A stretch of DNA of 64,000 bases, taken from the IMG/VR virus record IMGVR_UViG_3300028864_000014, positions 171,319 through 235,318 of that record, one strand, 5' to 3'. Under the pieces are notes generated by a model. It saw only the letters and a list, made by a program, of their open reading frames with translations, ran no database searches and was not told where the DNA came from. Below, piece by piece: positions 4,251-53,343 of the stretch (positions are counted from its first letter, which is position 1; every line of letters begins with the position of its first letter). A program made the translations under genes and the position numbers.

Positions 4251-5033
4251 ATGATAAAAAAATTTGATAAATTTAATGATAATTCATATTTAGATTATTT
4301 TACATATCTATATGAACTTGCTCCAAAAGAATTGAAAGATTTAATTGATGCAACAAAAGGAGTTAATCAAAGTGAATTGTGGCACAGTGAAGGTGACGCA
4401 TACACTCATATCAGATTAGTTGTTAATCGCTTACATGATAAGTATCATGATATAAATTTAGATTTAGCAGGATTATATCATGATTTAGGAAAAGCTAGTA
4501 CTACTGAGTGGAGTGAGGAAAAAAATTCGTGGATTTCACCTGGACATGAATATGTTTCTTGTGAAATGTTAGATGATCAATCAAATTTTGTTAAAGAAAT
4601 GGGAGGAGATTATAAATTAATTTATTATATAGTTGAGAATCATATGAAAATTAAATATTTAGATAACTTTAGAATACAAAATAAAATTGATATTCTAAAT
4701 CATAAATATTTTAATGACTTGATGAAATTTGACACAGCAGATTTTGGCGGAACAGACTTGAATTGTAAGTCTGTTCGAGATTTGTCTAATATCAGAATAG
4801 AAATAAAAGAATATGATGAAATTGAACTTGAGAATAAAGAAATTTCTAAAAAGTTCAATGGAAATATAATAATGAATAACTATCCAGAATTAAAAGGTAA
4901 AGAGTTAGGAAACAAAATGACAAAATTTAAAGAATATATTTCAAATAAATTTAATACTAATCTTAGAATTTTTATTTTAAAAAATCATTCTAGCGATATT
5001 ATGAATGAATTTGATATATTTATGAAAAATTAA
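4251..5033 (+). CDS. HD-domain phosphohydrolase (CCA-enzyme-type HD region, no nucleotidyltransferase domain)
   Basis: QSELWHSEGDAYTH, LAGLYHDLGK, PGHEYVS, IVENHM, KGKELG. Confidence 0.8.
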   Translation: MIKKFDKFNDNSYLDYFTYLYELAPKELKDLIDATKGVNQSELWHSEGDAYTHIRLVVNRLHDKYHDINLDLAGLYHDLGKASTTEWSEEKNSWISPGHEYVSCEMLDDQSNFVKEMGGDYKLIYYIVENHMKIKYLDNFRIQNKIDILNHKYFNDLMKFDTADFGGTDLNCKSVRDLSNIRIEIKEYDEIELENKEISKKFNGNIIMNNYPELKGKELGNKMTKFKEYISNKFNTNLRIFILKNHSSDIMNEFDIFMKN

Positions 5034-24134: not shown

Positions 24135-24170
24135 AAAAAAAGAGAGCAAATTAATTTGCTCTCTTTTTTT
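24135..24170. terminator. bidirectional terminator / perfect 36-bp palindrome (GAGAGC class)
   Basis: AAAAAAAGAGAGCAAATT|AATTTGCTCTCTTTTTTT between convergent genes. Confidence 0.85.
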
Positions 24171-26121: not shown

Positions 26122-26154
26122 AAAAAAGAGAGCAAATTATTTGCTCTCTTTTTT
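26122..26154. terminator. palindrome nearly identical to 24135-24170
   Basis: AAAAAAGAGAGCAAAT-t-ATTTGCTCTCTTTTTT. Confidence 0.85.
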
Positions 26155-26584
26155 ATCTAATTGAATAATCAATTATTTTTAATTCTTTGAATGATTTTAA
26201 TAATAGAATTTTATTCATCTCATGATCATAATAACCAAAATAATTATAATCATTAAATTCCTTCTTATTGATTAATATTTTCTCAATTAATATATTTATC
26301 TTATACTCATTTTCATTATAATTCGATTCTAAAAAATTCCAAATATATTTATGATCACACCAAATGAATTTATTGTCTGTATCTTGAATGAATAAACATT
26401 CTCCATTTATTTTATGATTTAATAAATCATCATTAGAAATATTATTCAATTTTAATAATTTATTTTTCCTTATATAAGATTCATCATAATACCAATAAAT
26501 TTGATGATATAAATTTTCACTAACCACTGGATAACATGACAACAATTTGTCTAATAACCAATTTCTTAAATCATCTGTTGACAT
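26153..26584 (-). CDS. Family X paralog (dispersed copy)
   Basis: NWLLDKLLSCYPV..YWYYDESYIRKNKLLKLNN..CLFIQD..WNFLESNY. Confidence 0.8.
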   Translation of the reverse strand: MSTDDLRNWLLDKLLSCYPVVSENLYHQIYWYYDESYIRKNKLLKLNNISNDDLLNHKINGECLFIQDTDNKFIWCDHKYIWNFLESNYNENEYKINILIEKILINKKEFNDYNYFGYYDHEMNKILLLKSFKELKIIDYSIR

Positions 26585-27607: not shown

Positions 27608-27635
27608 AAAGAGAGATAAATTATTATCTCTCTTT
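27608..27635. terminator. GAGAG-class terminator
   Basis: AAAGAGAGATAA-atta-TTATCTCTCTTT. Confidence 0.75.
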
Positions 27636-27752: not shown

Positions 27753-28085
27753 TTAAATGTTGAATTTGTTAGTATCAAATATATTCTTTAATTCTTCTTT
27801 GTTCTTGGACCAATTGATTATTTCAAATCTTGAAAATGGTATTGTATTTGAATATTTATAATCTCTAACATTTTTATATTTTCTTAAAGAATCTGGAACG
27901 TTAATGAAATGTACTTGATAAGGTTCTACTCTATTATCTTCATTATCAATTCCTATTATTTTTCCTATTTGATTACTAAGATATAAATTCAAATCAGGAC
28001 TATATTTGGTATTACAAATTACATAATCACCAACTTCTGGTTCTCCTTCATTAAAAGATTCGTATAGTTTAAATCCTGTTATCAT
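27753..28085 (-). CDS. late SH3/KOW-like protein with KxxE N-terminus and NKFNI C-terminus (copy 3)
   Basis: MITGFKLYESFNEGEPEVGDYVI...DTNKFNI. Confidence 0.8.
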   Translation of the reverse strand: MITGFKLYESFNEGEPEVGDYVICNTKYSPDLNLYLSNQIGKIIGIDNEDNRVEPYQVHFINVPDSLRKYKNVRDYKYSNTIPFSRFEIINWSKNKEELKNIFDTNKFNI

Positions 28086-28408
28086 ATATTAAATTTATTT
28101 GCATTTATTAAATATTCTAAATCTTCTTTTTTTTCAGAATAACCAACCATTTGAGAATGATAAAATGGTTTTATATATCCACTATCAATCTTTGTGAAAA
28201 ACTGAACTAATTCTTCTGGTACATTATCATATCTTATAACTAAGTTTTTTTTATCGTATTCTTCACCATATAAAACTCCTATTGTGCTATCAATAAATCC
28301 TTTCAAATTATATAGTATATCATTTCCACTATTCCAATTATATTCAATTACTATATAATCTCCAACTTTATATTTAGATAACCTTTCAAATTGTTTTATG
28401 TATTTCAT
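28082..28408 (-). CDS. late SH3/KOW-like protein, same family (copy 2)
   Basis: MKYIKQFE..KYKVGDYIV...NANKFNI. Confidence 0.8.
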   Translation of the reverse strand: MKYIKQFERLSKYKVGDYIVIEYNWNSGNDILYNLKGFIDSTIGVLYGEEYDKKNLVIRYDNVPEELVQFFTKIDSGYIKPFYHSQMVGYSEKKEDLEYLINANKFNI

Positions 28409-28692
28409 ATATTAAATTTGTTTGATTGTAGTAAAGGTTCTAATTCTTTTGAATTTTTTGCCCAATATATTATATTTTTTCTATTTACGAACCAAGTACC
28501 TGAAAAATCAATAACATATGAAGTAGAGTTAGCTTCATATAGTATATCAATTAATCTATGAATACCATTATTCACTAAGTCAATTGTTCCTTTTTGATAA
28601 TATGTATCATCTTCGATATCAACAATTACAAAGTCACCTTTCTCTGGCTCTCCTTCATTTATTGATTCATATATTTTAAATTTTGTAATCAT
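28405..28692 (-). CDS. late SH3/KOW-like protein, same family (copy 1)
   Basis: MITKFKIYESINEGEPEKGDFVI...QSNKFNI; TTAATATATA upstream. Confidence 0.8.
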   Translation of the reverse strand: MITKFKIYESINEGEPEKGDFVIVDIEDDTYYQKGTIDLVNNGIHRLIDILYEANSTSYVIDFSGTWFVNRKNIIYWAKNSKELEPLLQSNKFNI

Positions 28693-28726: not shown

Positions 28727-28757
28727 AAAAAGAGTAGATTTTAAATCTACTCTTTTT
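28727..28757 (-). terminator. terminator closing the structural operon
   Basis: AAAAAGAGTAGATTT-t-AAATCTACTCTTTTT. Confidence 0.8.
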
Positions 28758-28760
28758 ATG

Positions 28761-28967
28761 TTAATTGAATTGATATTCTATTACACTCTGTTCTGCATTA
28801 GTTAATCCAATTCCTAATATATTAATTCTTCCTCTATAAAAATTCTTAGGTGGTATAACACCATAATCTAACTTAATACTCATCGTATGTAATTTACCAA
28901 CTACTTTATTTAATGGTTGAATAACACCCATGTCTAACGATATATTCAAATTGTTTATTTTAGTCAT
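28761..28967 (-). CDS. module C peptide (ends VIEYQFN)
   Basis: 68 aa; internal repeat ISLDMGVI/IKLDYGVI. Confidence 0.75.
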   Translation of the reverse strand: MTKINNLNISLDMGVIQPLNKVVGKLHTMSIKLDYGVIPPKNFYRGRINILGIGLTNAEQSVIEYQFN

Positions 28968-28990
28968 TATTTTATTTTATTTTATTTTTA

Positions 28991-30703
28991 TTAAGCGTAA
29001 TCTTCATCAAAATGAGCATTTAGTTCAATTCTAAAAAATTTAATAGCTGGAATTTTATAATAATAATTAACAGAATCAGCAGATAAAATAACAAATTCAT
29101 TGTCTGCAGTTGTAATTGCATAATCACTATAATACGATATTTTATCACTTGTTATTTCACTAAATAACACAGGTAAATCTATTCTATCTCCTATTTTATG
29201 AAATAACATTAACACAATTCCGAAAAAAGGACAGCTAAATTTAGGAAAGCTAACAGAAGGAGTATTAATGTCGTCATAAGGTATAATTTCTTCTGATTCA
29301 AATGGAATGCTCAACACTTTACGTACTATTGTACCAGATCCTTCATTTAACAATGAATAGTTTAGAACATCAGTTCCTGTTTTGAAAAAATAATCTGGTA
29401 AATATTGAGTACCATTATATAATACTGCTGAAAATACGTCCTTAATTGTATTACACACTTTGTATAATGTATCGGCTTCTAAAGTACTTCCAGTTGTTAA
29501 TATAGTAATATCCAATAGATTTTGTTTTTTACCGAAGTAATAACCAAATGCACTACCATCATCTTCCATTGATTGACTACCTTTAAATTTAACACCGTTA
29601 GGTATAGATATTGTGGTATGACTTCTCATTCTATTCCATATTTGATCAGATGCTGTATTAAAATCAAAAGTATTATCAACATTACCTCTGAGTAAAGTAG
29701 CTGCATTAACTACATCATCAGAACCATCAGAATTAACATTAATTTGAACATCTAAATCTGTAGGTAATATAGGATTAGCAGGACCAAAACATCCTACATA
29801 TCCACCTAAGTCAGATGCATATAACGCTTCATTATTCGACTGCGGATTTAAAGAATAATCTAATATACTACCATCAGTATTATACATATTGAAAATGTTG
29901 CCTGATGTTCCGCCATTTCTTGATTCTTTTATAATTCTACAAGTTTCATTTCCAAAAGAATCTATCATAAAAAGAGAATCTAAGTTTTGCTGGCTCATTC
30001 CAGATTCTAAATATAGATTTCTAATTATCTGTATATTTGTTTTTGAATCATTAGTCCATTCAGGCTGTATTAATGGAATATTATTATATTTAAATATACA
30101 AGTTGATGGGAATACAACATATTTATTTGTTCCATTACTTGTATTAATCCAATTATATTCAGATACTTGAATACAATTTTTTATTGTACAACTACCTATT
30201 TCGTTTCCTAAAAAAGTAGATTGTAATATATTCCTGTCTCTTCTACCATCATTAGAAGAACCACGAGCGATATTCTCAACTAATAAATAACTAAAATTAT
30301 TTAATGATGAAACATTATATGATTTTATTATTGAATGAGACCAAGCTCTACTATTAACTGATCCACTCACGGAATCTACTGTCATATTATTGCAAAATGG
30401 TCCTTCATATATAACTGGATTATAATTTAAGAATAATAATTGTTGATTAATATCATCTCCAATTAAATTTTTATTATTTAATTGAAAATATTCATTTATT
30501 ACACCTCTAAAAATTATATATGTTACTCCAATTTTTTGATTAGCCTTAAATATAGATTTATATGGATATTCACGAGTACCATCTCCTGAAAAATCATCTC
30601 CAATATAAGTATGTACAAATACAGTATTTATATTAGTTATTTGTGTGACTGAATCTGTACCATCATCATTTGGAACGAAACGTGTTTTAAATAAATTTGT
30701 CAT
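28991..30703 (-). CDS. module B beta-helix-type virion protein
   Basis: GDDFSGDGTREYPYKSIFKA cap; GGYVGCF, NVNSDGSDD, EIIPYD, RIELN shared with two paralogs. Confidence 0.75.
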   Translation of the reverse strand: MTNLFKTRFVPNDDGTDSVTQITNINTVFVHTYIGDDFSGDGTREYPYKSIFKANQKIGVTYIIFRGVINEYFQLNNKNLIGDDINQQLLFLNYNPVIYEGPFCNNMTVDSVSGSVNSRAWSHSIIKSYNVSSLNNFSYLLVENIARGSSNDGRRDRNILQSTFLGNEIGSCTIKNCIQVSEYNWINTSNGTNKYVVFPSTCIFKYNNIPLIQPEWTNDSKTNIQIIRNLYLESGMSQQNLDSLFMIDSFGNETCRIIKESRNGGTSGNIFNMYNTDGSILDYSLNPQSNNEALYASDLGGYVGCFGPANPILPTDLDVQINVNSDGSDDVVNAATLLRGNVDNTFDFNTASDQIWNRMRSHTTISIPNGVKFKGSQSMEDDGSAFGYYFGKKQNLLDITILTTGSTLEADTLYKVCNTIKDVFSAVLYNGTQYLPDYFFKTGTDVLNYSLLNEGSGTIVRKVLSIPFESEEIIPYDDINTPSVSFPKFSCPFFGIVLMLFHKIGDRIDLPVLFSEITSDKISYYSDYAITTADNEFVILSADSVNYYYKIPAIKFFRIELNAHFDEDYA

Positions 30704-30705
30704 AA

Positions 30706-30972
30706 TTAATTAATTTTTATTTTTATTTGTAAATCTGAGCAAGCCCAACTACTTTGATCACTATAAATATATTGAGGATAAATTGTTATTGTAAATTTAT
30801 CAAATATAACGGTATAAGAAATTGGTCTATTAAATATATCTAAAGAATCTGGAATTAGTTTATCATTAATTAAAATATTAACATTCTTATTATACCATTC
30901 TTTAAATTCTGAACTTTGCATAGATAGTAGTTTGGTTTCATCAAACTCTGTTGTGCCTGTTATTTGTATCAT
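30706..30972 (-). CDS. module A small protein (MIQITxTxEFDE)
   Basis: paralog of 34482-34748. Confidence 0.75.
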   Translation of the reverse strand: MIQITGTTEFDETKLLSMQSSEFKEWYNKNVNILINDKLIPDSLDIFNRPISYTVIFDKFTITIYPQYIYSDQSSWACSDLQIKIKIN

Positions 30973-30989
30973 TTTTTTTTATATTTTTT

Positions 30990-31211
30990 TTAATTAAATT
31001 GATATTCTATTATACTTGGTGGAGCCACATCACAACTAGGTCCAAATGTACTAAGAGTACAAATAATAGGTTTATCTACACTTATACCTAAAAACATCAT
31101 TTCAGGTTTATGTATAATACTAGTTGATAATCCTAAAAAACCCAATTCATGATCATGTGCAGCATTAGTTGATAATCCTAAAAAATTCAATGAAAGGTTA
31201 TTATTCCGCAT
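30990..31211 (-). CDS. module C peptide (ends IIEYQFN)
   Basis: 73 aa; 15-aa repeats FLGLST/FLGLST/FLGISV/FGPSC. Confidence 0.75.
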   Translation of the reverse strand: MRNNNLSLNFLGLSTNAAHDHELGFLGLSTSIIHKPEMMFLGISVDKPIICTLSTFGPSCDVAPPSIIEYQFN

Positions 31212-32712
31212 AATTTAAATTTAATTCTATTTTAATATAAACTATAACTTGGGGTCTTAATGTAACTCCTGTTATAAAATTTAAATCAAATGATTCATTA
31301 TCAGCATTTGTTACTGCCCAATTTCCATATTCAGTTAAATTTATATCTGAAATTACACCTAATTCAGACAATTCATTAAATAGAACAGGAACATTCGCAT
31401 CTATGTGATACCAAATTTGACAGATATCATTAAATGGTGTTGAATATCTTGGATAAGAACTAATTTGTGTTAAAGAATCATAAGGTATAATTTCAACACT
31501 TTCACAAGGAACTGATGATGTTGTAAATGTTCTATTCTTTCCAAAATAAAATCTATCTATTAACCCACTTTTTAGTTGAGCTTGACCACCTCCAGGTTTC
31601 ATACCTCTTGCATATGATAATACGTTACTTCTTGTTCTATTTCTAGTTTGAATAGAATCTTGTGAAGCGTAGAATCCAACTTTTCCGTTGCTAATCAATA
31701 AATCTGGTGTTGTTACTAAATCGTCACTACCATCTGAATTAACATTGTTTATATCACCAAACACTAATGGATTACTACTAAACTCACCAGATATATTAGG
31801 TTTGTAACAACCAACATACTGATGATCAAGTAATGTAGGATTAGCCATATAAAGAGCAATATTATTTCCATTAACATTAAGAGTATAATCAGATATAGAT
31901 CCATCAACATTATACCTATTAAATATTGGATATATAGAATCATCTACAATCTTATTAGTTTGTCCTATAGATATATCTGAATAAAATGATGTGTCTATTA
32001 ATAACCTCATATAAGTTTGAGATGTGCCAGATAATGTATTAGTAGCATAATTAGTTAATGATGATAACAACTCAGGTATTGAATTTATATTATCAGTATC
32101 TGGAATTATTTCTCCATTCCATTTCCAAACAGTTGTTTTTCTAAATAAACAATATTTGAATATTGGATAACAACTTAATGCTACTCTTGGAAATAAATCA
32201 ATCATTGATACATATATATTAGAATCCTGTATCATACCAGTTGAATCTGTCCAATTATCAAAATTTAAAAATGTTGTATTAGAATCACCATTAGAATAAG
32301 ATGCAGCTCGTGATGATGATTCTACAAAATTAAAACTATTTTGTCCATATGAACCTAATCCTTTTCTAGTAACGAAACAATTTTTTACTTCTCCATAATT
32401 GCCTGTAACTTCTAATACTCTAAGATTATATAAATTTGCGGTATAACTTCCATTACATATTCCATTAATATCAGCAGATACATTATCACCTATTATATCA
32501 ACATATGATGATATATTTTCTATTGTAGGACCGCTTAAAACAATTGATGATGCTGTACCCATAGCGGATATAGCCTTGGTTAAAGTGGCATATGGCAACT
32601 CTCTTGTTCCTGGATTAGTGTTTAATCCAACTATTGTACTAACAAATTTAGTGTTTGTATTTGTTAGTACAATGTTACTTTTTGGATGATAGTATATTCT
32701 AAATATTCCCAT
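31201..32712 (-). CDS. module B beta-helix-type virion protein
   Basis: NPGTRELPYATLTKA; EYGNWAVTNAD; IKIELNLNY. Confidence 0.75.
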   Translation of the reverse strand: MGIFRIYYHPKSNIVLTNTNTKFVSTIVGLNTNPGTRELPYATLTKAISAMGTASSIVLSGPTIENISSYVDIIGDNVSADINGICNGSYTANLYNLRVLEVTGNYGEVKNCFVTRKGLGSYGQNSFNFVESSSRAASYSNGDSNTTFLNFDNWTDSTGMIQDSNIYVSMIDLFPRVALSCYPIFKYCLFRKTTVWKWNGEIIPDTDNINSIPELLSSLTNYATNTLSGTSQTYMRLLIDTSFYSDISIGQTNKIVDDSIYPIFNRYNVDGSISDYTLNVNGNNIALYMANPTLLDHQYVGCYKPNISGEFSSNPLVFGDINNVNSDGSDDLVTTPDLLISNGKVGFYASQDSIQTRNRTRSNVLSYARGMKPGGGQAQLKSGLIDRFYFGKNRTFTTSSVPCESVEIIPYDSLTQISSYPRYSTPFNDICQIWYHIDANVPVLFNELSELGVISDINLTEYGNWAVTNADNESFDLNFITGVTLRPQVIVYIKIELNLNYAE

Positions 32713-32735
32713 AAATTATATATTTTTTATTATTT

Positions 32736-32918
32736 TTAATTAAATTGATATTCTATTATACTTGGTAATGCAGGATCTGTACTTATACCAAAAAATGTTA
32801 TATCACCTGGTACTAATGTTTCAACTGTTATGTTGATAAGTGATATTTCTGCAGGCATACCGCTAACAAATTGAGTGCAAGAAATAAAATCTATTGATAT
32901 GTTATTAATACGTTCCAT
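32736..32918 (-). CDS. module C peptide (ends IIEYQFN)
   Basis: 60 aa; FFGIST..PSIIEYQFN. Confidence 0.75.
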   Translation of the reverse strand: MERINNISIDFISCTQFVSGMPAEISLINITVETLVPGDITFFGISTDPALPSIIEYQFN

Positions 32919-34495
32919 TATAAATAATAATTAAGATTTATTTCTACTTTAGCATAATAGATTTTTATGTTATTTAGTTTTATACCAGGTAATGAGCTTA
33001 ATAAAAAACTTTCATAATCAGCATTTGTAACAGCCCAATTTCCGTACTCAGTTAAATTTTTATCAGTCACTATTCCAAATGATAAAAGATCATTAAATAA
33101 AATAGGTAAATTTGTTGTTGAGTTATACCACATTTGACACACACCATTAAACATAACTGAAAATCTCGGAAATGATGAAGGTTCTGTCATACTGTCATAT
33201 GGAATAATCTCTAATGATTCTTGAGGTAAAGATGGAGAATCTGTCACATTATATGCTTGAAATTTACCAAAAGAGAATCTACTTTCTAATCCAGATTTAA
33301 CTTGTCCTTGCATTCCAGCTAAAGAAAAACCACGTTTAAAAGTAAATACATTAGAACGAATTCTATTTCTTATCTGAACTGAATCAGCGGAACTAACAGT
33401 AAAATTACTATTGCCATTAAAAACTAGCATATCAGGAATTGTAACTAAGTCGTCAGAACCATCAGAATTCACATTTAATACATTGTTAAATGTTATCACA
33501 TCAGCATTTGCTTTGTAACATCCAACATAGTTTTTTTGATCGCTCATAGTTAAAGCAATGTTTTCAGAATTCAAAAACAAAGAATAATCAATAGGATTGT
33601 CATTTGTGTATCTATTAAATATTTTTTTGCTTCCTTCAATAGATGGTCTATCCTCAACTACCTTACATGTTTGTCCATTAATATCTATGTAAAATAAAGG
33701 AGACGTAATTTCATTTGGAAACATAGTCTGACAGTATGCTTTTTCCGTTGCATCTACAATGGTATTAGAAAAAATATACCATGCTGAAATTACATCTGTC
33801 ATATAATCATTCAATATATTACCATAAGTACCATAGTTAATAGGAACTATAATACCTTTCCATTTCCAAATTATTGTTTTTCTAAATAAACAATATTTGA
33901 AAATTTGAAAATTTGATATATTTGATACTGATGTATAATTATATAAATCTACTTCAATAACAAATATGAAATTTAATAAATTGACACCTGATATTTTACA
34001 ATAATTTTTAAAATTTAATACTGTATTATTTTTAATATTCAATCCATTACTTATTCCATTATTTGAACCTCCTTCTACTAAGCTATTGTAATTGTTAATA
34101 AAGTTACTCTCAACTATTGATGAACTCATTAACATTGTGTTTATACTTGAATTTATTATACCTCCAAGTCCAGTGAATTGTAATATTTTTATACCATAAA
34201 AAATGCTTGATCCATAATAATTACATGTCCAACTACCATTTAAATATGCATCTTCTCCATCTCCTATTAAATATCCATGAAAAAATGATGCTGGATTTTC
34301 AATAGTTTCTCCTCTATATAATATATTACGAGCATTATCATCATATAATGATGTAAATTTTGTCAATGTCGCAATTGGAAATTCTCTTGTTCCTGGATTA
34401 TTGTTGTTGCCAGTTATTGAACATACAAATGTGGTGTTTGCATCAGTGAGAACAGTATTTGTAACTGGATTATAGTATCTTTTAAATATTCCCAT
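32918..34495 (-). CDS. module B beta-helix-type virion protein
   Basis: NPGTREFPIATLTK; EYGNWAVTNAD; AKVEINLNY. Confidence 0.75.
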   Translation of the reverse strand: MGIFKRYYNPVTNTVLTDANTTFVCSITGNNNNPGTREFPIATLTKFTSLYDDNARNILYRGETIENPASFFHGYLIGDGEDAYLNGSWTCNYYGSSIFYGIKILQFTGLGGIINSSINTMLMSSSIVESNFINNYNSLVEGGSNNGISNGLNIKNNTVLNFKNYCKISGVNLLNFIFVIEVDLYNYTSVSNISNFQIFKYCLFRKTIIWKWKGIIVPINYGTYGNILNDYMTDVISAWYIFSNTIVDATEKAYCQTMFPNEITSPLFYIDINGQTCKVVEDRPSIEGSKKIFNRYTNDNPIDYSLFLNSENIALTMSDQKNYVGCYKANADVITFNNVLNVNSDGSDDLVTIPDMLVFNGNSNFTVSSADSVQIRNRIRSNVFTFKRGFSLAGMQGQVKSGLESRFSFGKFQAYNVTDSPSLPQESLEIIPYDSMTEPSSFPRFSVMFNGVCQMWYNSTTNLPILFNDLLSFGIVTDKNLTEYGNWAVTNADYESFLLSSLPGIKLNNIKIYYAKVEINLNYYL

Positions 34496-34748
34496 AAACT
34501 AGATATTTTTTAAAATTAAAATCTTGATTTCCAACAATTGGATAATATTCAGCCTCTACTGTTATATTACCAAATATCCAAGTCGATGGTCTTCCAAATT
34601 TATCAAATGTTGAACAAGTTTTTGATTCATCATTCTTAAAATTTATTTTACTTAAGCATTCAGTTTGAAACCATATCGTAAATCCAGATGATTGAAATTC
34701 TAAATCTTTAGATTCATCAAACTCTATTGTGTCTGTTATTTGTATCAT
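34482..34748 (-). CDS. module A small protein (MIQITxTxEFDE)
   Basis: paralog of 30706-30972. Confidence 0.75.
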   Translation of the reverse strand: MIQITDTIEFDESKDLEFQSSGFTIWFQTECLSKINFKNDESKTCSTFDKFGRPSTWIFGNITVEAEYYPIVGNQDFNFKKYLVYGNI

Positions 34749-34762
34749 ATTTTATTTGTTTT

Positions 34763-37700
34763 TTAGAAAATTATAATCGCATTAGCATTGTCATATCCAG
34801 TTTGTATTGCAATATCTAAAATAACTAAGTCAGTTAAAGCAGGTAAAGTTACTCCAACTAATGTTATTTCATCGTAAGTAATATCACTAATTGAAACAGT
34901 TACTCCTGAACAGTTAGTTGTTAATAATACTCTTGATATTGTTTTATCTGTTATCCATTGAAATCTTTGAGGACTTGGTGTGCTATTTGCTCCAATTTTA
35001 CTTAAAGATAAACTTTGAGGTATAATTGATGAATCAACAGTAATTCCATTTCCGTCAATACAAAGATGAATTTCACCACCATTAATAGGAGTAGGGTAAG
35101 AACCATCATTTTTCTTACAATAATATAATTTTCCTCCTGATATTTCAACAAACTGTCCTACACAATTATTATAAGTACCTCCATTTATCGTAGTAAATGA
35201 AGAAGATAATCCTTCACAATTAGTAAAAGTACCAGAGCAAATTCCATTAAAACTACCGTTATTCCCTTTACAATTTAAAAATGTACCAGTTAAATTATTT
35301 ACTTGAAAAATTAATACAGAATTTACATCTGTAAATGTTCCAGATAATGTATCAATTGAACTTGAAAATAATGGCAAATTATTAGAACTGAATATGTTTT
35401 TGAAAATACCTGAGCAATTAAAAATACCTGAAAACCCAGATCCCATTGTAATATTTATATTCTTAAATGTTCCAGATGCAGTAACATCACCATTAGTAGT
35501 ATCAGCTTGAATTTGTCCAGAGCAATTTTCAATATATAATTCTGGAAAATTTCCTGTTAGTTTTAAGCCACCGTCAATAAAGTTAATACCATTTATTTTT
35601 ATTTTATTATTAGTAATTATAACACCAGAACCACCAATATTTACATCGATATTTCCAGTAGATGAAACTAAATTTATATTTTGAGTATCTAAATTAAGAC
35701 TATCAGTTAGAAAACTATAATATCCAGGATATATAATAATATTAACTGGACTATCTGGTGCTGGTACTATAGCTTTCGCTATATTATACACATTTTGCAA
35801 TTCATTTCCATTTATTCCAGGATTACTATTTCCACCTTTTACTGTTAAAAATTGAGTTCCTATTGTTGGAGCAAAATCACCTCCCCCAATTATTTTTCCA
35901 TAACCGTCAATACATAATATAATTGTACCTCCACTTGAAGGTATTTCAAATGTACCTGGAGTAGTCAATCTACAATTATATAAACTTCCTGTTAATGCTC
36001 CACCTCGTGTAGAGTCACCAAAAGATTTACTTTTTGCTGTACAATTTATAAATGTTCCAGATGCAATACCATCAATTCCAAATGAAGTATTTCCAGCAGT
36101 ACAATTTATAAATGTTCCAGATACATTTGCTCCAACTTCATTTGTTCCAAATGAGAAATCTCCAGAATTACAATTAATAAATGTACCAGATAAAGATGTT
36201 GAAGAAAATCCAGTTTCAGCAGTACAATTTATAAATCTTCCAGATAAATCTCCATTCTCTCCATTAAACAACGCACCGTCTGATGTTATATTTTCAAAAT
36301 GACCAGGAAAGTCAGAAACACCTGATCCAAATGTGTTATTTGTTAATTTTAAATTTTTAAATGTTCCAGATAAAATAGTACTATTATCAATTGTGCTACC
36401 TTTAATTTGTCCTGAACAATTTTCAATCCTTAATCCAGGAAAATTTCCTCTTATTTCTAATCCCATACCTGTAAAATTTATACCAATTAATTTAATATTA
36501 TCTGTGATAATTAATATACCACTATAACCAATTTCAATATCTAATTCCCCTGTTGAAGAAATTAAATTTATATAAGGAGTATCTAAACTAATTAATGATG
36601 TCATTCCATAATAACCAGGATAAATAATTATATTAATTGGACTAATTATTGTTGGATTTAAAGCCTTAGCTATATTATAAACATTCTGTAACTCAGCTCC
36701 ATTTGTTCCAGGATCACTACTGATTCCTTTAACTGTTAAATATTGATTTCCATCTGATGGAGCAAAATCTCCTGCTCCTATTACTGCTCCATAACCGTCA
36801 ATACATAACAGAATAGTACCTCCACTTGAAGGAAGTCCAAATGTACCTGGCGTAGTCAATCTACAATTATATAAACTACCTGTTAATGTTCCACCTTGTT
36901 TAGAATCACCAAAAGATCCAGTATTACCTTTTGCTGTACAATTCACAAATGTTCCAGATGTCATACAATGAGCACCAAATGAAGAATTTCCAGCATTACA
37001 ATTAATAAATGTACCAGACACTTCTATTCCACTATTACCAAATGAATTATCACCAGAATTGCAATTAATAAAAGTAGTTCCAGATGATATAATACAACCT
37101 CCTCCTCCTCCAAATCCAGCATCATCACATGTACAATTTTCAAATGTCGCACCAGATGATATGACAGCTCCTCCTACACCAAATCCGTTTGCAGCATTAC
37201 AATTTTTGAATATACCAGATATAATTTTAGTATCATAAAATAAATTTCCACCTTTATGATATATATTTTCAAAATATCCAGATGCTTCTTGTATATAACC
37301 AAATCCATTACCATTAACTAAATTTATATCTTTAAAAGTTCCAGATAAATTAGTATCTGGATACGTTAAAATATTACCCCCATCTATCATTCCTGAACAA
37401 TTTTCAATCCATAACCCTGGAAAATTTCCAGTGAGTTTTAATCCACTACCTCCAAAAAATATACCTGTCAATTTAATATTATCTGAAATAACAATAGCGC
37501 CAGCAAATTCAATTTTAACATCTAATTCTCCTGTTGCTGATATTAAATTTATATAAGGAGTATCTAAACTAAGTCCATTAGACATTCCGTAATATCCAGG
37601 ATATATAATTATGTTTATAGGATTATTTGAACTCGGATTTATAGATTTTGCTAAATCATATACAGTTTGTAATTCCTCTCCATTTATTCCAGAATCAACA

Positions 37701-38770
37701 TTTTTTCCTTCAACAGTTAAATATTGAGCACCATCAGATGGAGCATAATTAGTTGGAATTCCAACTACATTAGTTGCTGATATATTTGTTATTTTTGATC
37801 CATCTCCACTCATTGTACCACCACTTACAACTAAATTACAATCTACTATTACATATCCAGTACTATTAATAGGTTTTATTGCTTCATAATCTGCATGTCT
37901 TATTGACTTTAATGCATCGCCAACATTATCTATTGTTATATTTGGATTGACACTTATCATATAAGACGTCATTGTTTCAAAATCAGAATTTAAAGGTACT
38001 CTCCAACCATCTGGATTATTTTGTATTAATGTGTTAGCTGCAAATAAGCAATATATTCTACCGTATATAACATTTATATCATTTTGAGTATATCCACTAG
38101 GCATGGTAAAAGGTAAATTAAATATTGCATAATCTTCTATAATATTTTCAATTGGATATTCAGCATAAGCAGGATATTGAGTACTAGTATTATACCACCA
38201 ATCATGATCATCCAAAGTTACTAATGAAGTTGTTGCAGATGATGCATAATCATATCCATTTATAACTCTTAAATTTTCTCTAGTCCAAATTTGAGTACCA
38301 ATTTTAACACAACTATATACATTTCCGTCTATATCTGTGAATCCAGATGAAATTATTTCTCCATCAGATAATAATGTTTCACCTGAAGTCGCTTCACGAG
38401 TTAGTCTTATTGAAAATCCATTATATCCAGACCATTCATTATATGAAATAGTAGATAATTGATTATCTAAAAGTGCAGCATAAAATTTAGTAGATGTACT
38501 ACCTGGTGTTGAAGTTCCAAAATAAGTTGAAAATCCGTTATTAAAATAAACTCCTTGGTTTCCTCTAATACCTGCTGTTACAGCGTCAAAATTATAATAA
38601 TCTTTTCCATATATATTATAATCCCCACTATACCACCAAAGAGGAAATTCAGTTGTAGTTCCAATAGTTGGTGGTACTTTTTCCCAATAACTTGCAGAAC
38701 TACTTCCAGTTAATCCGCTTTCAAATCCTCTAACCCATTCCTGACTAGCTAAATATATTATTTCACTCAT
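34763..38770 (-). CDS. large mosaic fibre/adhesin: LASxEWV tag, Fib_succ_major (FISUMP)-like region, three repeated beta-helix modules
   Basis: YLASQEWV; FTDIDGNVYSCVKIGTQIWTRENL..YGRIY..GWRVP; AP(S/T)xGxQYLTV..NGxELQxVY..IIIYPGYY x3; FINCxAG repeats. Confidence 0.8.
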   Translation of the reverse strand: MSEIIYLASQEWVRGFESGLTGSSSASYWEKVPPTIGTTTEFPLWWYSGDYNIYGKDYYNFDAVTAGIRGNQGVYFNNGFSTYFGTSTPGSTSTKFYAALLDNQLSTISYNEWSGYNGFSIRLTREATSGETLLSDGEIISSGFTDIDGNVYSCVKIGTQIWTRENLRVINGYDYASSATTSLVTLDDHDWWYNTSTQYPAYAEYPIENIIEDYAIFNLPFTMPSGYTQNDINVIYGRIYCLFAANTLIQNNPDGWRVPLNSDFETMTSYMISVNPNITIDNVGDALKSIRHADYEAIKPINSTGYVIVDCNLVVSGGTMSGDGSKITNISATNVVGIPTNYAPSDGAQYLTVEGKNVDSGINGEELQTVYDLAKSINPSSNNPINIIIYPGYYGMSNGLSLDTPYINLISATGELDVKIEFAGAIVISDNIKLTGIFFGGSGLKLTGNFPGLWIENCSGMIDGGNILTYPDTNLSGTFKDINLVNGNGFGYIQEASGYFENIYHKGGNLFYDTKIISGIFKNCNAANGFGVGGAVISSGATFENCTCDDAGFGGGGGCIISSGTTFINCNSGDNSFGNSGIEVSGTFINCNAGNSSFGAHCMTSGTFVNCTAKGNTGSFGDSKQGGTLTGSLYNCRLTTPGTFGLPSSGGTILLCIDGYGAVIGAGDFAPSDGNQYLTVKGISSDPGTNGAELQNVYNIAKALNPTIISPINIIIYPGYYGMTSLISLDTPYINLISSTGELDIEIGYSGILIITDNIKLIGINFTGMGLEIRGNFPGLRIENCSGQIKGSTIDNSTILSGTFKNLKLTNNTFGSGVSDFPGHFENITSDGALFNGENGDLSGRFINCTAETGFSSTSLSGTFINCNSGDFSFGTNEVGANVSGTFINCTAGNTSFGIDGIASGTFINCTAKSKSFGDSTRGGALTGSLYNCRLTTPGTFEIPSSGGTIILCIDGYGKIIGGGDFAPTIGTQFLTVKGGNSNPGINGNELQNVYNIAKAIVPAPDSPVNIIIYPGYYSFLTDSLNLDTQNINLVSSTGNIDVNIGGSGVIITNNKIKINGINFIDGGLKLTGNFPELYIENCSGQIQADTTNGDVTASGTFKNINITMGSGFSGIFNCSGIFKNIFSSNNLPLFSSSIDTLSGTFTDVNSVLIFQVNNLTGTFLNCKGNNGSFNGICSGTFTNCEGLSSSFTTINGGTYNNCVGQFVEISGGKLYYCKKNDGSYPTPINGGEIHLCIDGNGITVDSSIIPQSLSLSKIGANSTPSPQRFQWITDKTISRVLLTTNCSGVTVSISDITYDEITLVGVTLPALTDLVILDIAIQTGYDNANAIIIF

Positions 38771-45492: not shown

Positions 45493-46266
<774 letters not shown>

Positions 46267-46267
<1 letters not shown>

Positions 46268-46677
46268 TGACAAAAGAAGAATTAAGTGATTTTATATTGG
46301 AGACATTAAAAAAATGCTATAAAGTTAAACATGAGGATTATCCAAGTATAATTTTTTGGATATATGATGAACAATTCATTAGAAAAATTAAATTAGGCAA
46401 AATAAATAATCAAGACATAAAAATTACAAATGAAATTAACGGAACTTGTATATTTCAACAAGATTTTAAAAAATTAAAATTTCGTTGTAATGATGATATT
46501 TGGACTTTTTTATTCAGATACTATTCCGATGATTACTATGATAATCAGAAATTCATGAAAGATATACTAAAAAATATTACTAATTTAAATATGTATTTAC
46601 CAACAATGAATTCATCAACAGCTAATATATCATTGAAAAATTACAAGAAAATAAGTTTATATTTAAATGATGTATAA
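46267..46677 (+). CDS. Family X paralog, array 3/13
   Basis: same motif set. Confidence 0.85.
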
Positions 46678-47065
46678 AAAAGATTTATATGATTGGTTCT
46701 GGAATAAATATAATTCCTGCTATCAAGTTAAAGTAGAATTATATCCAGATAGTGTATTCTTAGTTTATGACGAAAAATATATAAGAAAACTTAAATTGTT
46801 TAAATTAAATAATACAGAAGAGTTAATTTCAATTAATAATGTTGAAGGAACATTTTTATTTAATCAGGATAATAAATTTAGAATTTTATGGCTGAGTGAA
46901 GAATTGTGGAAGTTCTTTGAAAAAAACTATTCATATGACTACTATGATATTCAAAAACTAATAAAAAAACTACTAAAAGATCATCCAATTTTATTCGATT
47001 ATAATCCTTTACCTGGTATGATTAAAAATATATATGAAAATAGTATTATAAAATCAAGATTATAA
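46667..47065 (+). CDS. Family X paralog, array 4/13
   Basis: same motif set. Confidence 0.85.
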   Translation: MMYKKDLYDWFWNKYNSCYQVKVELYPDSVFLVYDEKYIRKLKLFKLNNTEELISINNVEGTFLFNQDNKFRILWLSEELWKFFEKNYSYDYYDIQKLIKKLLKDHPILFDYNPLPGMIKNIYENSIIKSRL

Positions 47066-47985
<920 letters not shown>

Positions 47986-47989
47986 TAAT

Positions 47990-50626
<2,637 letters not shown>

Positions 50627-50634
<8 letters not shown>

Positions 50635-51091
50635 AGAAGAATTATCAAATTGGTTGATTAGCAAAATTTTATATTGCTATCCAGTAGTAGATAAAGAATG
50701 GAATGATTACGTTTTTTATTTCTATGACGAACAATATATTAGAAAACTTAAATTGTTTAAGTTATATAATATAAAAATAACATCGCCAAATCAAGTTAAT
50801 GGAATATGCTTATTTAGTTTAAATATTAAATATAAAATTATTTACTTTCATTATGAATATGTTTGGAAATTCTTTGAAAATAATTATATAAATAATTATA
50901 TACAAATTGAAAAATTTATAACTGAAATTATAAATGATTATAAACAACTAAATAAGTATTCACCAAAAAAAAATTCACAAGGATTTAGATATCCTGAACT
51001 AATAAGAAGTAAGAAAAATTTAGAAATTAGAGAAGCTGATTGGTCATCTCTACTTCCAAGTTCATATAAAAAATTAATAGTATTGAAATAA
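50627..51091 (+). CDS. Family X paralog, array 13/13
   Basis: same motif set. Confidence 0.85.
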
Positions 51092-52941: not shown

Positions 52942-53334
52942 TTAATTTCCTATGATTTTAAGTTTTATACTTTTTTTACATATCTCACAAAATACATTAA
53001 ATTGATTAAAAATTGCTTCATCTATTCCAGCTAATTTTTTTCGTTGAATTGCTAATTGCTGATCATATGTATATTCAGAATTAATAAGTCCTGATACTTG
53101 TGATTCATATGATAAAGAATCATATTCATATAATCCTTCTTGAATATAATCACCCATATCAGTGTAAATTTTCCAACCAGTACTTCCAGATGAAAATCTC
53201 AATTCTTTGTAACCATTTTCAATACATAAATCAGAATTGTTATTAAATCCAACTATTCCATCTTTACTTTTTGGTGCTTTTTCGATAGTAACTTTATCTA
53301 TCATTTTTACATACGTTCTTTTAAATATATTCAT
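52942..53334 (-). CDS. fibre-associated small protein / chaperone-like
   Basis: VSGLINSEYTYDQQLAIQR..FNQFNVFCEICK, pattern typical of tail-region proteins in Bacteroidota phages. Confidence 0.55.
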   Translation of the reverse strand: MNIFKRTYVKMIDKVTIEKAPKSKDGIVGFNNNSDLCIENGYKELRFSSGSTGWKIYTDMGDYIQEGLYEYDSLSYESQVSGLINSEYTYDQQLAIQRKKLAGIDEAIFNQFNVFCEICKKSIKLKIIGN

Positions 53335-53343
53335 AATTATTAT

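What the first reader, a model, noticed from the sequence alone, without database searches (positions are those of the whole stretch)
28761..34748. Thrice-repeated A-B-C module: small A protein, beta-helix B protein, IEYQFN peptide
Seen: order on minus strand A-B-C, B-C, A-B-C. B (503-570 aa) has a GxxxxxGTRExPY beta-helix cap, a variable N-half and a conserved C-half (YVGCY/F, NVNSDGSDD, EIIPYD, AxTxAD, ELN). Every B is immediately followed by a 60-73 aa C ending (I/V)IEYQFN. A starts MIQITxTxEFDE. Inference: an undescribed three-component appendage or adhesin unit with cognate pairs, in which C completes or anchors B and A acts as chaperone or adaptor.
Basis: partly seen in the sequence, partly recalled or inferred. 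Interest (0 to 1): 0.75.

Follow-up and report, generated by a model that had tools for sequence, protein, structure and literature searches.

The report
Triplicated phage tailspike cassette with helpers
A giant peat-soil phage carries three diverged copies of a host-recognition cassette (a small adaptor-like protein, a beta-helix tailspike-like protein and a tiny beta-strand-repeat protein) that also occurs, always in this order, in unrelated uncultured phages and has no match in the family and phage-genome libraries searched.

Summary
On the minus strand, one transcription unit encodes a 1335-aa fibre, then A-B-C, B-C, A-B-C, and ends in a strong terminator.

B is a right-handed parallel beta-helix protein of the tailspike or polysaccharide-lyase fold (AF2 pLDDT 91.5; VIA Z 12-13). 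A is a confidently folded 88-aa alpha+beta domain (pLDDT 93.7) with no structural neighbour. C is 60-73 aa, built from 3-4 amphipathic beta-strand repeats and a conserved C-terminal strand.

The unit is not local to this genome. Of 25 non-redundant B homologues with full flanks, 22 have A directly upstream and 24 have C directly downstream. They come from crAss-like, temperate and megaphage contigs. The gene before A is almost always a variable fibre ending in a conserved ~90-aa domain (CTD).

None of A, B or C has a Pfam or PHROG family, a PDB relative by sequence, or a homologue in 50,697 GenBank phage records.

Best reading: this is a mobile, plug-in receptor-binding cassette, triplicated here, probably to widen receptor range. 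The roles of A (adaptor between CTD and B) and C (B-specific assembly partner or cap) are inferred, not shown. I rate it a new variant of a known kind, of moderate to high interest.

The parts
34763..38770 (-). Fibre protein, 1335 aa. It has an N-terminal Fib_succ_major domain, three internal ~310-aa repeats and a conserved C-terminal docking domain (CTD). It is the first gene of the unit.
   Evidence: ORF; Pfam PF09603, E 6.6e-11; internal repeats 46-61% identical; CTD HMM hit E 1.9e-37 on residues 1246-1340 of the open frame.
34766..35035 (-). CTD: the last ~90 aa of the fibre. This domain is shared by the gene that precedes A in almost all related loci.
   Evidence: Alignment of 19 upstream-protein C-termini; a CTD-bearing ORF lies upstream of B in 24 of 28 loci.
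34482..34748 (-). A (type I), 88 aa. It overlaps the start of the following B by 14 nt.
   Evidence: A HMM E 9.6e-28; A family of 61 clusters, all unnamed.
32918..34495 (-). B (type I), 525 aa, beta-helix tailspike-like protein.
   Evidence: B HMM E 1.5e-210.
32736..32918 (-). C (type I), 60 aa, three beta-strand repeats, ends PSIIEYQFN. Its start shares one base with the stop of B.
   Evidence: C HMM E 1.3e-16.
31201..32712 (-). B (type I), 503 aa. It is the only B without its own A: only 23 nt separate it from the preceding C. This copy was modelled by AF2.
   Evidence: AF2 pLDDT 91.5, pTM 0.89; VIA Z 12-13.4 to pectin methylesterases, Pel9A and phage tailspikes over residues ~14-260; its 78%-identical orthologue in L014 does have an A.
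30990..31211 (-). C (type I), 73 aa, four h-F-x-G-L-S repeats, ends PSIIEYQFN. It overlaps the end of B by 11 nt.
   Evidence: C HMM E 7.6e-17.
30706..30972 (-). A (type II), 88 aa. This copy was modelled by AF2.
   Evidence: A HMM E 1.3e-36; AF2 pLDDT 93.7, pTM 0.80; no structural neighbour, best VIA Z 4.2.
28991..30703 (-). B (type II), 570 aa, with a ~70-aa insertion in the C-half relative to type I.
   Evidence: B HMM E 1.1e-120; 54-69% identical to the B of many single-module loci.
28761..28967 (-). C (type II), 68 aa, three repeats with a 22-aa period (I-G-I-x-L-D-x-G-V-I-P-P), ends SVIEYQFN.
   Evidence: C HMM E 3.5e-30.
28727..28757 (-). Intrinsic-terminator-like hairpin (14-bp stem followed by a T run), 4 nt after the last C. 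It marks the end of the transcription unit.
   Evidence: No comparable hairpin lies between 28967 and 38770.

Best explanation
This is a receptor-binding (host-recognition) cassette of a tailed phage, present here in three diverged copies behind one fibre gene.

Shown:
- B is a right-handed parallel beta-helix protein of the tailspike or polysaccharide-lyase fold. It lacks the separate N-terminal anchor domain of classical tailspikes.
- B is flanked almost universally by a small, independently folding alpha+beta protein (A) and by a tiny protein of 3-4 amphipathic beta-strand repeats with a conserved C-terminal strand (C).
- The gene before A is a variable, often collagen-like fibre that ends in a conserved ~90-aa domain (CTD).
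- The genes overlap or abut, and here they form one transcription unit.
- The cassette moves between unrelated phages.
- The beta-helix body of B (residues ~61-285) diverges independently of A, C and the two ends of B.

Inferred:
- The trimeric fibre carries the CTD at its distal end as a common socket.
- A is the adaptor. Its N-half, conserved across types, binds the CTD. Its type-specific C-half holds B, replacing the anchor domain that B lacks.
- The variable beta-helix of B binds, and perhaps cleaves, a surface polysaccharide.
- C binds the conserved C-terminal half of its cognate B by beta-strand addition, as an assembly factor that may stay on as a cap.
- The triplication gives one fibre up to three receptor specificities, that is, a wider or switchable host range. 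The middle B shares the type-I A of the first module.
For: Fold of B:
- AF2 gives pLDDT 91.5 and pTM 0.89.
- VIA Z is 12-13.4 to pectin methylesterases, Pel9A, the phage 7-7-1 long tail fibre and the Fri1, CBA120 and Dettilon tailspikes.
- Foldseek PDB, BFVD and AFDB hits are all beta-helix, DUF1565 or tail-fibre proteins.

Tail-fibre context:
- Neighbouring genes are collagen-like tail-fibre PHROGs, a Laminin_G_3 protein and a CBM_5_12 protein.
- Upstream CTD proteins hit tail-fibre and minor-tail PHROGs.
- In small phages the cassette sits just before the lysis genes.

Synteny and coding:
- A is upstream in 22 of 25 loci, C downstream in 24 of 25, and a CTD fibre upstream in 24 of 28. This includes the divergent type III.
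- Genes overlap by 1-16 nt, and the only strong terminator follows the last C.
- A and C are real genes, with dN/dS 0.17-0.53.
- A folds on its own.

Adaptor idea:
- Between types, A residues 1-45 are 34% identical against 17% for residues 46-88, and the CTD is 34% identical.
- A chimeric ORF made of the A N-half plus the CTD sits between a CTD fibre and a normal A in two contigs.
- In the model, B residues 1-20 are conserved but lack regular structure.

Modularity:
- Within type II, A and C identity track the ends of B (rho 0.65-0.90) but not its middle (0.32-0.36).
- CTD identity is uncorrelated with A, B and C.
- Only the cassette is shared between otherwise unrelated genomes.

Expansion:
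- Relatives carry one module (L022, L030, L036) or two (L014).
Against: - No physical or predicted interface was obtained: no multimer modelling was possible, and there are no virion proteomics and no isolate.
- B models confidently without C, so C is not needed to complete the fold in silico.
- One locus (L039) has the CTD fibre directly followed by B, with neither A nor a separate C. The partners are therefore dispensable in at least one lineage.
- The co-variation figures are confounded by shared ancestry. In type I (n=7-8) they are weak.
- Type-I C proteins have 3 or 4 repeats, which argues against a strict one-repeat-per-subunit model.
- No catalytic residues are conserved in the beta-helix body, so an enzymatic activity is unsupported.
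- The host is unknown. The single genome-collection hit was a 3-kb scaffold of doubtful binning.
Confidence: 0.55

Rival explanations
1. A and C are both dedicated folding or assembly chaperones that are not part of the virion, like lambda/Mu Tfa, T4 gp57A/gp38 or Alteromonas V22 gp27. B would attach to the fibre directly through its own N-terminal peptide.
For: - C lies immediately downstream of the receptor-binding gene, the classical position of tail-fibre chaperones, and co-varies with it.
- Chaperone-dependent fibres with weakly or transiently bound chaperones are documented (PMC10579305).
- L039 lacks both A and C yet keeps the CTD fibre next to B.
- The middle B here has no A of its own.
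- GH136 beta-helix enzymes appear among the weak hits to the B cap. From my own knowledge, not checked here, these enzymes need a dedicated chaperone.
Against: - Neither A nor C shows sequence or fold similarity to any known chaperone family.
- C (60-75 aa, all beta-strand repeats) is far smaller than known Tfa-type or IMC-type chaperones.
- B lacks an anchor domain, so something must hold it.
- The A(N-half)-CTD chimera is easier to explain if A is a structural connector.
Confidence: 0.27
2. C is the true distal adhesin. It would be a small tip protein sitting on the end of B that contacts the receptor through its variable inter-repeat loops, as gp38 does on gp37 in T2/S16-type phages. B would be mainly a stalk.
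For: - C has conserved repeat cores separated by variable linkers, and it is the most divergent of the three proteins (mean identity 0.26-0.50).
- Its C-terminal strand is nearly invariant, as expected of an attachment element.
Against: - The most variable, independently exchanged part of the cassette is the beta-helix body of B, not C.
- C has no glycine-rich polyglycine-II motifs and no match to gp38-type adhesins.
- 60 aa offers very little surface for specific receptor binding.
Confidence: 0.08
3. The cassette is not a tail receptor-binding device. It would be a capsid (head) fibre decoration, or a free, non-virion depolymerase with its secretion or folding helpers.
For: - In the crAss-like loci B lies only two genes upstream of the major capsid protein.
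- crAss001 carries head fibres (PMC10172136).
- No direct evidence places B on a tail.
Against: - The upstream partner proteins match tail-fibre, minor-tail and tail-collar PHROGs.
- The window neighbourhood is rich in tail-fibre-like genes.
- In the small phages the cassette closes the tail operon, before holin-like and endolysin genes.
- The crAss001 head-fibre proteins are small (gp29 has ~118 residues), and the phage collection returned no match to B.
Confidence: 0.07
4. A and C are chance ORFs, or leftovers of frameshifted B ends, with no function of their own.
For: They are short (60-90 aa), the genome is 23% GC so open frames are not rare, and gene callers often miss C (only 13 clusters were found).
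Against: - They are conserved at protein level at 20-40% identity across unrelated phages.
- dN/dS is 0.17-0.53.
- A gives a confident AF2 fold.
- Position, own start codon and length are constant.
Confidence: 0.02

Closest known systems
Multi-tailspike, branched receptor-binding systems of phages such as CBA120 (TSP1-4), G7C and the Klebsiella jumbo phages
   Same: Several diverged beta-helix receptor-binding proteins are encoded in tandem and presumably mounted together on one scaffold to widen host range. The beta-helix fold matches CBA120 TSP1/TSP2 and other tailspikes.
   Different: In those systems the attachment modules are N-terminal domains of the tailspikes themselves. Here B starts with the helix cap at about residue 20, and an 88-aa protein of a different, unmatched fold is encoded separately. 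No small C-like partner is known to me there. There is no sequence homology.
Tail fibre plus downstream assembly chaperone pairs (lambda/Mu/P2 Tfa, T4 gp37-gp38/gp57A, Alteromonas V22 gp26-gp27 and A5 gp8-gp9, PMC10579305)
   Same: A small gene lies directly downstream of the receptor-binding gene, is inherited with it and moves with it between unrelated phages. Beta-strand pairing with the fibre head has been proposed for the Alteromonas chaperones.
   Different: C is 60-75 aa, purely beta-strand repeats, and has no helical body. It has no match to DUF4376, Caudo_TAP or any Pfam or PHROG family. A second small partner (A) lies upstream. The partner protein is a beta-helix, not a fibre knob.
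Agrobacterium phage 7-7-1 long tail fibre gp015 (PDB 9rkv; PMC12796354)
   Same: It is the best Foldseek PDB hit and reaches VIA Z 12.1 over the beta-helix. It is a trimeric tail fibre with a central beta-helix followed by a C-terminal beta domain.
   Different: gp015 carries its own 120-residue N-terminal baseplate anchor and a triple jelly-roll C-terminus. No A-like or C-like partners are described. Identity is 11-15%.
DUF1565 / pectin-lyase-fold beta-helix proteins (PF07602, NosD, Pel9A)
   Same: The N-terminal cap motif (G..G.R..P) and the overall solenoid are shared. The best AFDB cluster model is a DUF1565 protein aligned over B residues 1-502 (TM 0.45/0.53).
   Different: B scores below the Pfam threshold (16.4 against 20.3 bits, and only 6 of 76 members reach E<0.01). 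The conserved C-half motifs of B are family-specific.
PAAR / T4 gp5.4 caps on trimeric beta-helical spikes
   Same: This is an analogy only: a single small chain with three internal repeats that could sit on a three-fold axis (type-II C has three repeats with a 22-aa period).
   Different: There is no PAAR motif and no Pfam hit. Type-I C has 3 or 4 repeats. The oligomeric state of B is unknown. B is a right-handed single-chain solenoid, not an intertwined triple beta-helix.
Tail fibres of Crassvirales (crAss001 gp22 and partners, PMC10172136)
   Same: B homologues with A and C occur in crAss-like contigs next to Crass_capsid and CrAss_Ring_1 genes. The distal fibres of crAss001 are multi-protein and unresolved.
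   Different: No B homologue was returned from the GenBank phage collection, which I expected to hold cultured crassviruses but did not check. The cassette also occurs in non-crAss phages.

Membership tests
Phage tailspike / beta-helix receptor-binding proteins | Right-handed parallel beta-helix (pectin-lyase fold) as the central domain | tested here: met
   AF2 pLDDT 91.5; VIA Z 12-13.4 to many beta-helix enzymes and tailspikes over residues ~14-260.
Phage tailspike / beta-helix receptor-binding proteins | Own N-terminal particle-binding (anchor) domain before the helix | tested here: not met
   The helix cap motif is at residues ~29-45 and the first rung at 21-25. Residues 1-20 have no regular structure.
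Phage tailspike / beta-helix receptor-binding proteins | Homotrimer in the virion | not testable with these tools
   Only single-chain prediction was available. There is no isolate and no proteomics.
Phage tailspike / beta-helix receptor-binding proteins | Encoded within the tail-fibre or baseplate gene cluster | tested here: met
   Neighbours and upstream partners hit tail-fibre PHROGs. The cassette closes the structural operon before the lysis genes in small phages.
Phage tailspike / beta-helix receptor-binding proteins | Polysaccharide-degrading active site (for depolymerase-type spikes) | tested here: inconclusive
   No acidic or basic residue is conserved in the helix body across 76 members. 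Lineage-specific sites cannot be excluded.
Pfam DUF1565 (PF07602) | HMM score at or above the gathering threshold (20.3 bits) | tested here: not met
   16.4 bits for the 503-aa B; 6 of 76 family members reach E<0.01, best E 0.0015. There is structural resemblance only.
Tail fibre assembly chaperones (Tfa/Caudo_TAP, DUF4376, T4 gp38, gp57A) | Sequence or profile similarity to a chaperone family | tested here: not met
   No Pfam, PHROG or PDB match for A or C, as single sequences or as alignments.
Tail fibre assembly chaperones (Tfa/Caudo_TAP, DUF4376, T4 gp38, gp57A) | Gene directly downstream of, and inherited with, the receptor-binding gene | tested here: met
   C lies downstream of B in 24 of 25 loci. 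Within type II, C identity tracks the B C-half (rho 0.81).
Tail fibre assembly chaperones (Tfa/Caudo_TAP, DUF4376, T4 gp38, gp57A) | Required for folding or oligomerisation of the partner | not testable with these tools
   This needs co-expression experiments.
Intramolecular chaperone domain (Peptidase_S74) of endosialidase/T5-type fibres | C-terminal S74 domain with a Ser-Lys autocleavage dyad | tested here: not met
   No Pfam hit in B or C. C is a separate ORF with its own start codon.
PAAR-like single-chain caps | PAAR motif or Pfam PAAR domain | tested here: not met
   No Pfam hit for any C.
PAAR-like single-chain caps | Three internal repeats giving pseudo-three-fold symmetry | tested here: inconclusive
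   Type-II C has three repeats at residues 8, 30 and 52. Type-I C has 3 or 4 repeats with a 15-18-aa period.

The most novel reading that the evidence does not exclude
The four genes encode a natural plug-and-socket system for exchanging receptor-binding heads between unrelated phages. The CTD would be a universal socket, and A a free-standing plug that replaces the anchor domain of classical tailspikes. C would be a new kind of stoichiometric subunit: a single chain of beta-strand repeats that staples or caps the conserved end of B through its invariant C-terminal strand. In this megaphage one fibre would display three different heads.
Probability: 0.25. Interest if true: 0.75.

Novelty: new variant of a known kind. 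Interest (0 to 1): 0.62.

Why it matters
Receptor-binding modules decide phage host range, and they are the parts most often engineered.

This cassette is conserved across crAss-like, temperate and megaphage genomes from environmental metagenomes, yet it has no match in Pfam, in PHROGs or in 50,697 GenBank phage records. It therefore marks a blind spot in current annotation of receptor-binding proteins.

If A proves to be a detachable adaptor and the CTD a common socket, the system would explain how whole recognition heads move between unrelated phages. It would also offer a compact scaffold for swapping specificities.

The two small proteins are new families (61 and at least 13 clusters). One of them has a confident fold without structural neighbours.

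The triplication in a ~0.7-Mb peat megaphage is a clear example of host-range hardware being expanded by tandem duplication.

Tried and rejected
- **Natural B-C fusion.** By eye, the C-terminal extension of P0098 (the L039 ORF) looked like one C repeat plus the terminal strand. The C HMM does not detect it even with filters off, so I dropped it as evidence. L039 is reported only as a locus without A and without a separate C.
- **Host identification through prophages.** The genome-collection scan gave one 3-kb scaffold binned to a Negativicutes MAG, which is too short to trust.
- **Cultured relatives.** blastn and tblastn against the GenBank phage collection found nothing.
- **Family assignment.** Pfam and PHROG scans of single proteins and of whole alignments gave only a sub-threshold DUF1565 cap hit for B.
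- **PDB by sequence profile.** B gave only weak cap hits (E 0.028). A and C gave nothing.
- **ESM Atlas.** The B model there is poor (pLDDT 0.43) and there are no models for A or C.
- **Fold of A.** There is no significant neighbour in the PDB (VIA Z at most 4.2, Foldseek E above 1) or in the Atlas. The roadblock-like and RelE-like top rows are at noise level.
- **Crass_capsid in the window's own genome.** It was not found, but the control genomes did not ring either, so this is uninformative.
- **RNA evidence.** No RNA run was listed.
- **Gene conversion as the cause of the shared IEYQFN ending.** The last 27 nt of two of the C genes are identical. With 23% GC and preferred AT-rich codons this cannot be told apart from selection on the peptide.

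Full report
**1. Source and setting**

The window is the last 64 kb of a 235-kb IMG/VR virus record that CheckV rates 33% complete. GC content is about 23%. Close relatives of one of the small genes lie on contigs of up to 711 kb, so the virus is probably a megaphage of roughly 0.7 Mb. Near-identical DNA occurs in at least 15 peat metagenome runs.

The region around the finding is rich in fibre-like genes:
- collagen-repeat proteins that hit tail-fibre PHROGs,
- a Laminin_G_3 protein,
- a CBM_5_12 protein,
- a 1335-aa protein with a Fib_succ_major domain.

**2.

All eight ORFs are present on the minus strand at the stated coordinates, in the order A-B-C, B-C, A-B-C.
- The three B proteins (525, 503 and 570 aa) are paralogues. 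The 503-aa and 525-aa copies are 48% identical, and both are 32-33% identical to the 570-aa copy. The N-half is variable and the C-half conserved.
- The three C proteins share only 29-33% identity, but all end in S(I/V)IEYQFN.
- The two A proteins are 36% identical and share the first 12 residues almost exactly.

The genes overlap or abut. A overlaps B by 14 nt, and B and C overlap by 1 or 11 nt. The only strong terminator-like hairpin lies 4 nt after the last C. The 1335-aa fibre gene and the three modules therefore form one transcription unit.

The arrangement is not an assembly artefact. Three IMG/VR contigs from different metagenomes are colinear with it over 8.8-10 kb at 99.99-100% identity. 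Logan contigs of two further runs cover it without joints.

**3. The unit is conserved far beyond this genome**

A word-index search with the 503-aa B found 37 clusters of unnamed metagenomic proteins. A profile search of 1.84 billion representatives found 275 hits at E<=0.001, 78 of them at E<=1e-30; most of these cover the whole profile.

I fetched loci from IMG/VR, ENA, JGI and Logan, built HMMs of A, C and the upstream C-terminal domain, and scored every open frame.
- Of 25 non-redundant B genes with enough flank on both sides, 22 have an A directly upstream, 24 have a C directly downstream, and 22 have both.
- The exceptions are the middle B of this window (no A of its own), locus L039 (neither A nor C), and L034, where B is split into two frames.
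- In 24 of 28 cases the gene before A is a fibre-like protein of very variable length (98 to 1335 aa) and content. It ends in a conserved ~90-aa C-terminal domain, here called CTD.

The carriers are unrelated:
- crAss-like contigs, with Crass_capsid two genes away and CrAss_Ring_1 nearby,
- a temperate phage with integrase and an S24 repressor,
- this megaphage lineage.

Outside the cassette these genomes share almost nothing with the window's genome.

Three sequence types of the A-B-C set can be told apart. The window has two type-I modules and one type-II module. Relatives of this phage carry one module (L022, L030, L036) or two (L014). In L014 the orthologue of the A-less middle B does have its own A. 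The triple array is therefore a recent, lineage-specific expansion.

**4. What the proteins are**

*B.* AlphaFold2 with a 76-sequence alignment gives a confident model of the 503-aa B (pLDDT 91.5, pTM 0.89).
- Residues ~14-260 form a right-handed parallel beta-helix. VIA-align Z is 12-13.4 to pectin methylesterases, pectate lyase Pel9A, the long tail fibre of Agrobacterium phage 7-7-1, and several phage tailspikes. Foldseek hits in the PDB, BFVD and AFDB agree.
- The best AFDB cluster model, a DUF1565 protein, aligns over residues 1-502. The conserved C-half may therefore continue the solenoid with long excursions. I could not settle this.
- B has no separate N-terminal anchor domain. The helix cap starts at about residue 20, and the conserved first 20 residues have no regular structure in the model.
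- No Pfam or PHROG family reaches threshold. No GenBank phage record matches.

*A.* A folds confidently on its own (pLDDT 93.7, pTM 0.80). The fold is two short strands, a helix at residues 21-34 and a three-stranded antiparallel sheet. It has no significant structural neighbour.

*C.* C consists of 3-4 amphipathic beta-strand repeats. The period is 22 aa in type II and 15-18 aa in type I.
- A terminal strand follows, with a nearly invariant Y-Q two residues (three in one 120-aa member) before the C-terminus.
- IEYQFN is the local version of this strand, not a family signature.

A and C are under purifying selection, with dN/dS 0.17-0.53. The A family has 61 clusters and the C family at least 13, none with an informative name.

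**5. How it most likely works**

Shown: the fold of B, the four-part synteny, the tight gene spacing, the mobility of the cassette, and the pattern of divergence.

On divergence within type II:
- The identities of A and C track the first 60 residues of B (rho 0.74 and 0.65) and its C-half (0.90 and 0.81).
- They track the beta-helix body, residues 61-285, only weakly (0.36 and 0.32).
- CTD identity is uncorrelated with A, B or C.

So the helix body is exchanged on its own, as expected of a specificity determinant. The A-B-C set is exchanged as a block relative to the fibre.

Between types, the A N-half (34% identity) and the CTD (34%) are conserved, while the A C-half is not (17%). In two contigs a chimeric ORF joins an A-like N-half to a CTD. 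It sits between a CTD-bearing fibre and a normal A.

From this I infer a chain:
1. a trimeric fibre, often with a collagen stalk directly before the CTD;
2. the CTD acting as a socket;
3. A acting as an adaptor that replaces the missing anchor domain of B;
4. B acting as the glycan-binding head;
5. C acting as a B-specific assembly factor or cap that binds the conserved C-half through strand addition.

The triplication would put up to three specificities on one fibre. The roles of A and C are inference only, because no interface could be computed.

**6. Rivals**

- The main rival is that A and C are assembly-only chaperones in the manner of Tfa, gp38/gp57A or V22 gp27. This fits the position of C and the existence of L039, which has neither. 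It does not explain what holds an anchor-less B, nor the A-CTD chimera.
- C as the true adhesin is unlikely, because the variable, independently exchanged part is the helix body of B.
- A capsid-fibre or free-enzyme reading is unlikely given the tail-fibre matches of the partners and the position of the cassette before the lysis genes.
- Chance ORFs are excluded.

**7. Comparison with known systems, and novelty**

In function this resembles multi-tailspike branched systems and fibre-chaperone pairs. It fails the membership tests that could be run:
- B has no anchor domain.
- No chaperone family matches A or C.
- B is below threshold for DUF1565.
- There is no S74 domain and no PAAR motif.

Literature searches found no description of such a cassette. 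The distal tail fibres of crAss001 are reported as multi-protein and unresolved.

I rate the finding a new variant of a known kind: a receptor-binding module built around a familiar fold, but with two new small-protein families and a conserved socket domain.

**8. Limits**

- No multimer modelling, no virion data and no host assignment were possible.
- The co-variation statistics rest on 7-11 sequences per type and are confounded by ancestry.
- The folds of C, the CTD and the isolated B C-half were not predicted, because only two structure jobs were allowed.

Noticed in passing
whole window; G000:C1 (235,318 bases): The record is probably a third of a ~0.7-Mb megaphage with 23% GC from peat. 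CheckV completeness is 33%. A 76%-identical homologue of the 68-aa C (cluster P0239) lies on contigs of up to 711 kb, and the DNA is present in at least 15 peat metagenome runs.
   Followed up: partly
window 45493-51091 (+) and 26153-26584 (-): There is a tandem array of 13 paralogous genes of 116-168 aa, most of them overlapping or abutting the next. All begin M..EEL..WF..K.NSCY. A further member lies next to the cassette on the other strand. The function is unknown.
   Followed up: partly
window 27753-28692 (-): Three tandem paralogues of 95-110 aa, all ending in NKFNI, lie directly downstream of the cassette's terminator. The same genes follow the cassette in the single-module relatives L022 and L030.
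   Followed up: partly
window 34763-38770 (-): The 1335-aa fibre contains three tandem ~310-aa repeats (46-61% identical). Each opens with a beta-helix-cap-like motif, so the fibre may itself carry three solenoid domains. The N-terminus has a Fib_succ_major domain, which from my own knowledge is typical of Fibrobacter and Bacteroidota.
   Followed up: partly
window 52942-55305 (-); L005 10010-12628: A second gene pair (653 aa plus 130 aa) is shared at 41-44% identity with the crAss-like contig L005. There it directly follows the A-B-C cassette. It may be another mobile fibre module.
   Followed up: no
L016 5452-5748; L035 586-930: A conserved ~98-aa chimeric ORF combines an A-like N-half with the C-terminal part of the CTD. 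It is inserted between a CTD fibre and a normal A, and may be a chain-extending connector.
   Followed up: partly
window 24135-24170, 26122-26154, 27608-27635, 28727-28757: Four long hairpins (12-16 bp), three of them called on both strands, share the core AAAAAGAG...CTCTTTTT and sit between gene blocks. Twelve terminator-like sites were found against 2.4 expected.
   Followed up: no
window 4251-5033 (+): A 260-aa ORF matches the PHROG for tRNA nucleotidyltransferase (E 2.9e-9), although no tRNA gene lies in the window.
   Followed up: no
L039 2976-5521: This is a higher-GC, divergent locus in which the CTD fibre overlaps the start of B directly. There is no A and no separate C, and B carries a ~35-aa C-terminal extension of unclear origin. 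A HEPN/nucleotidyltransferase pair follows.
   Followed up: partly
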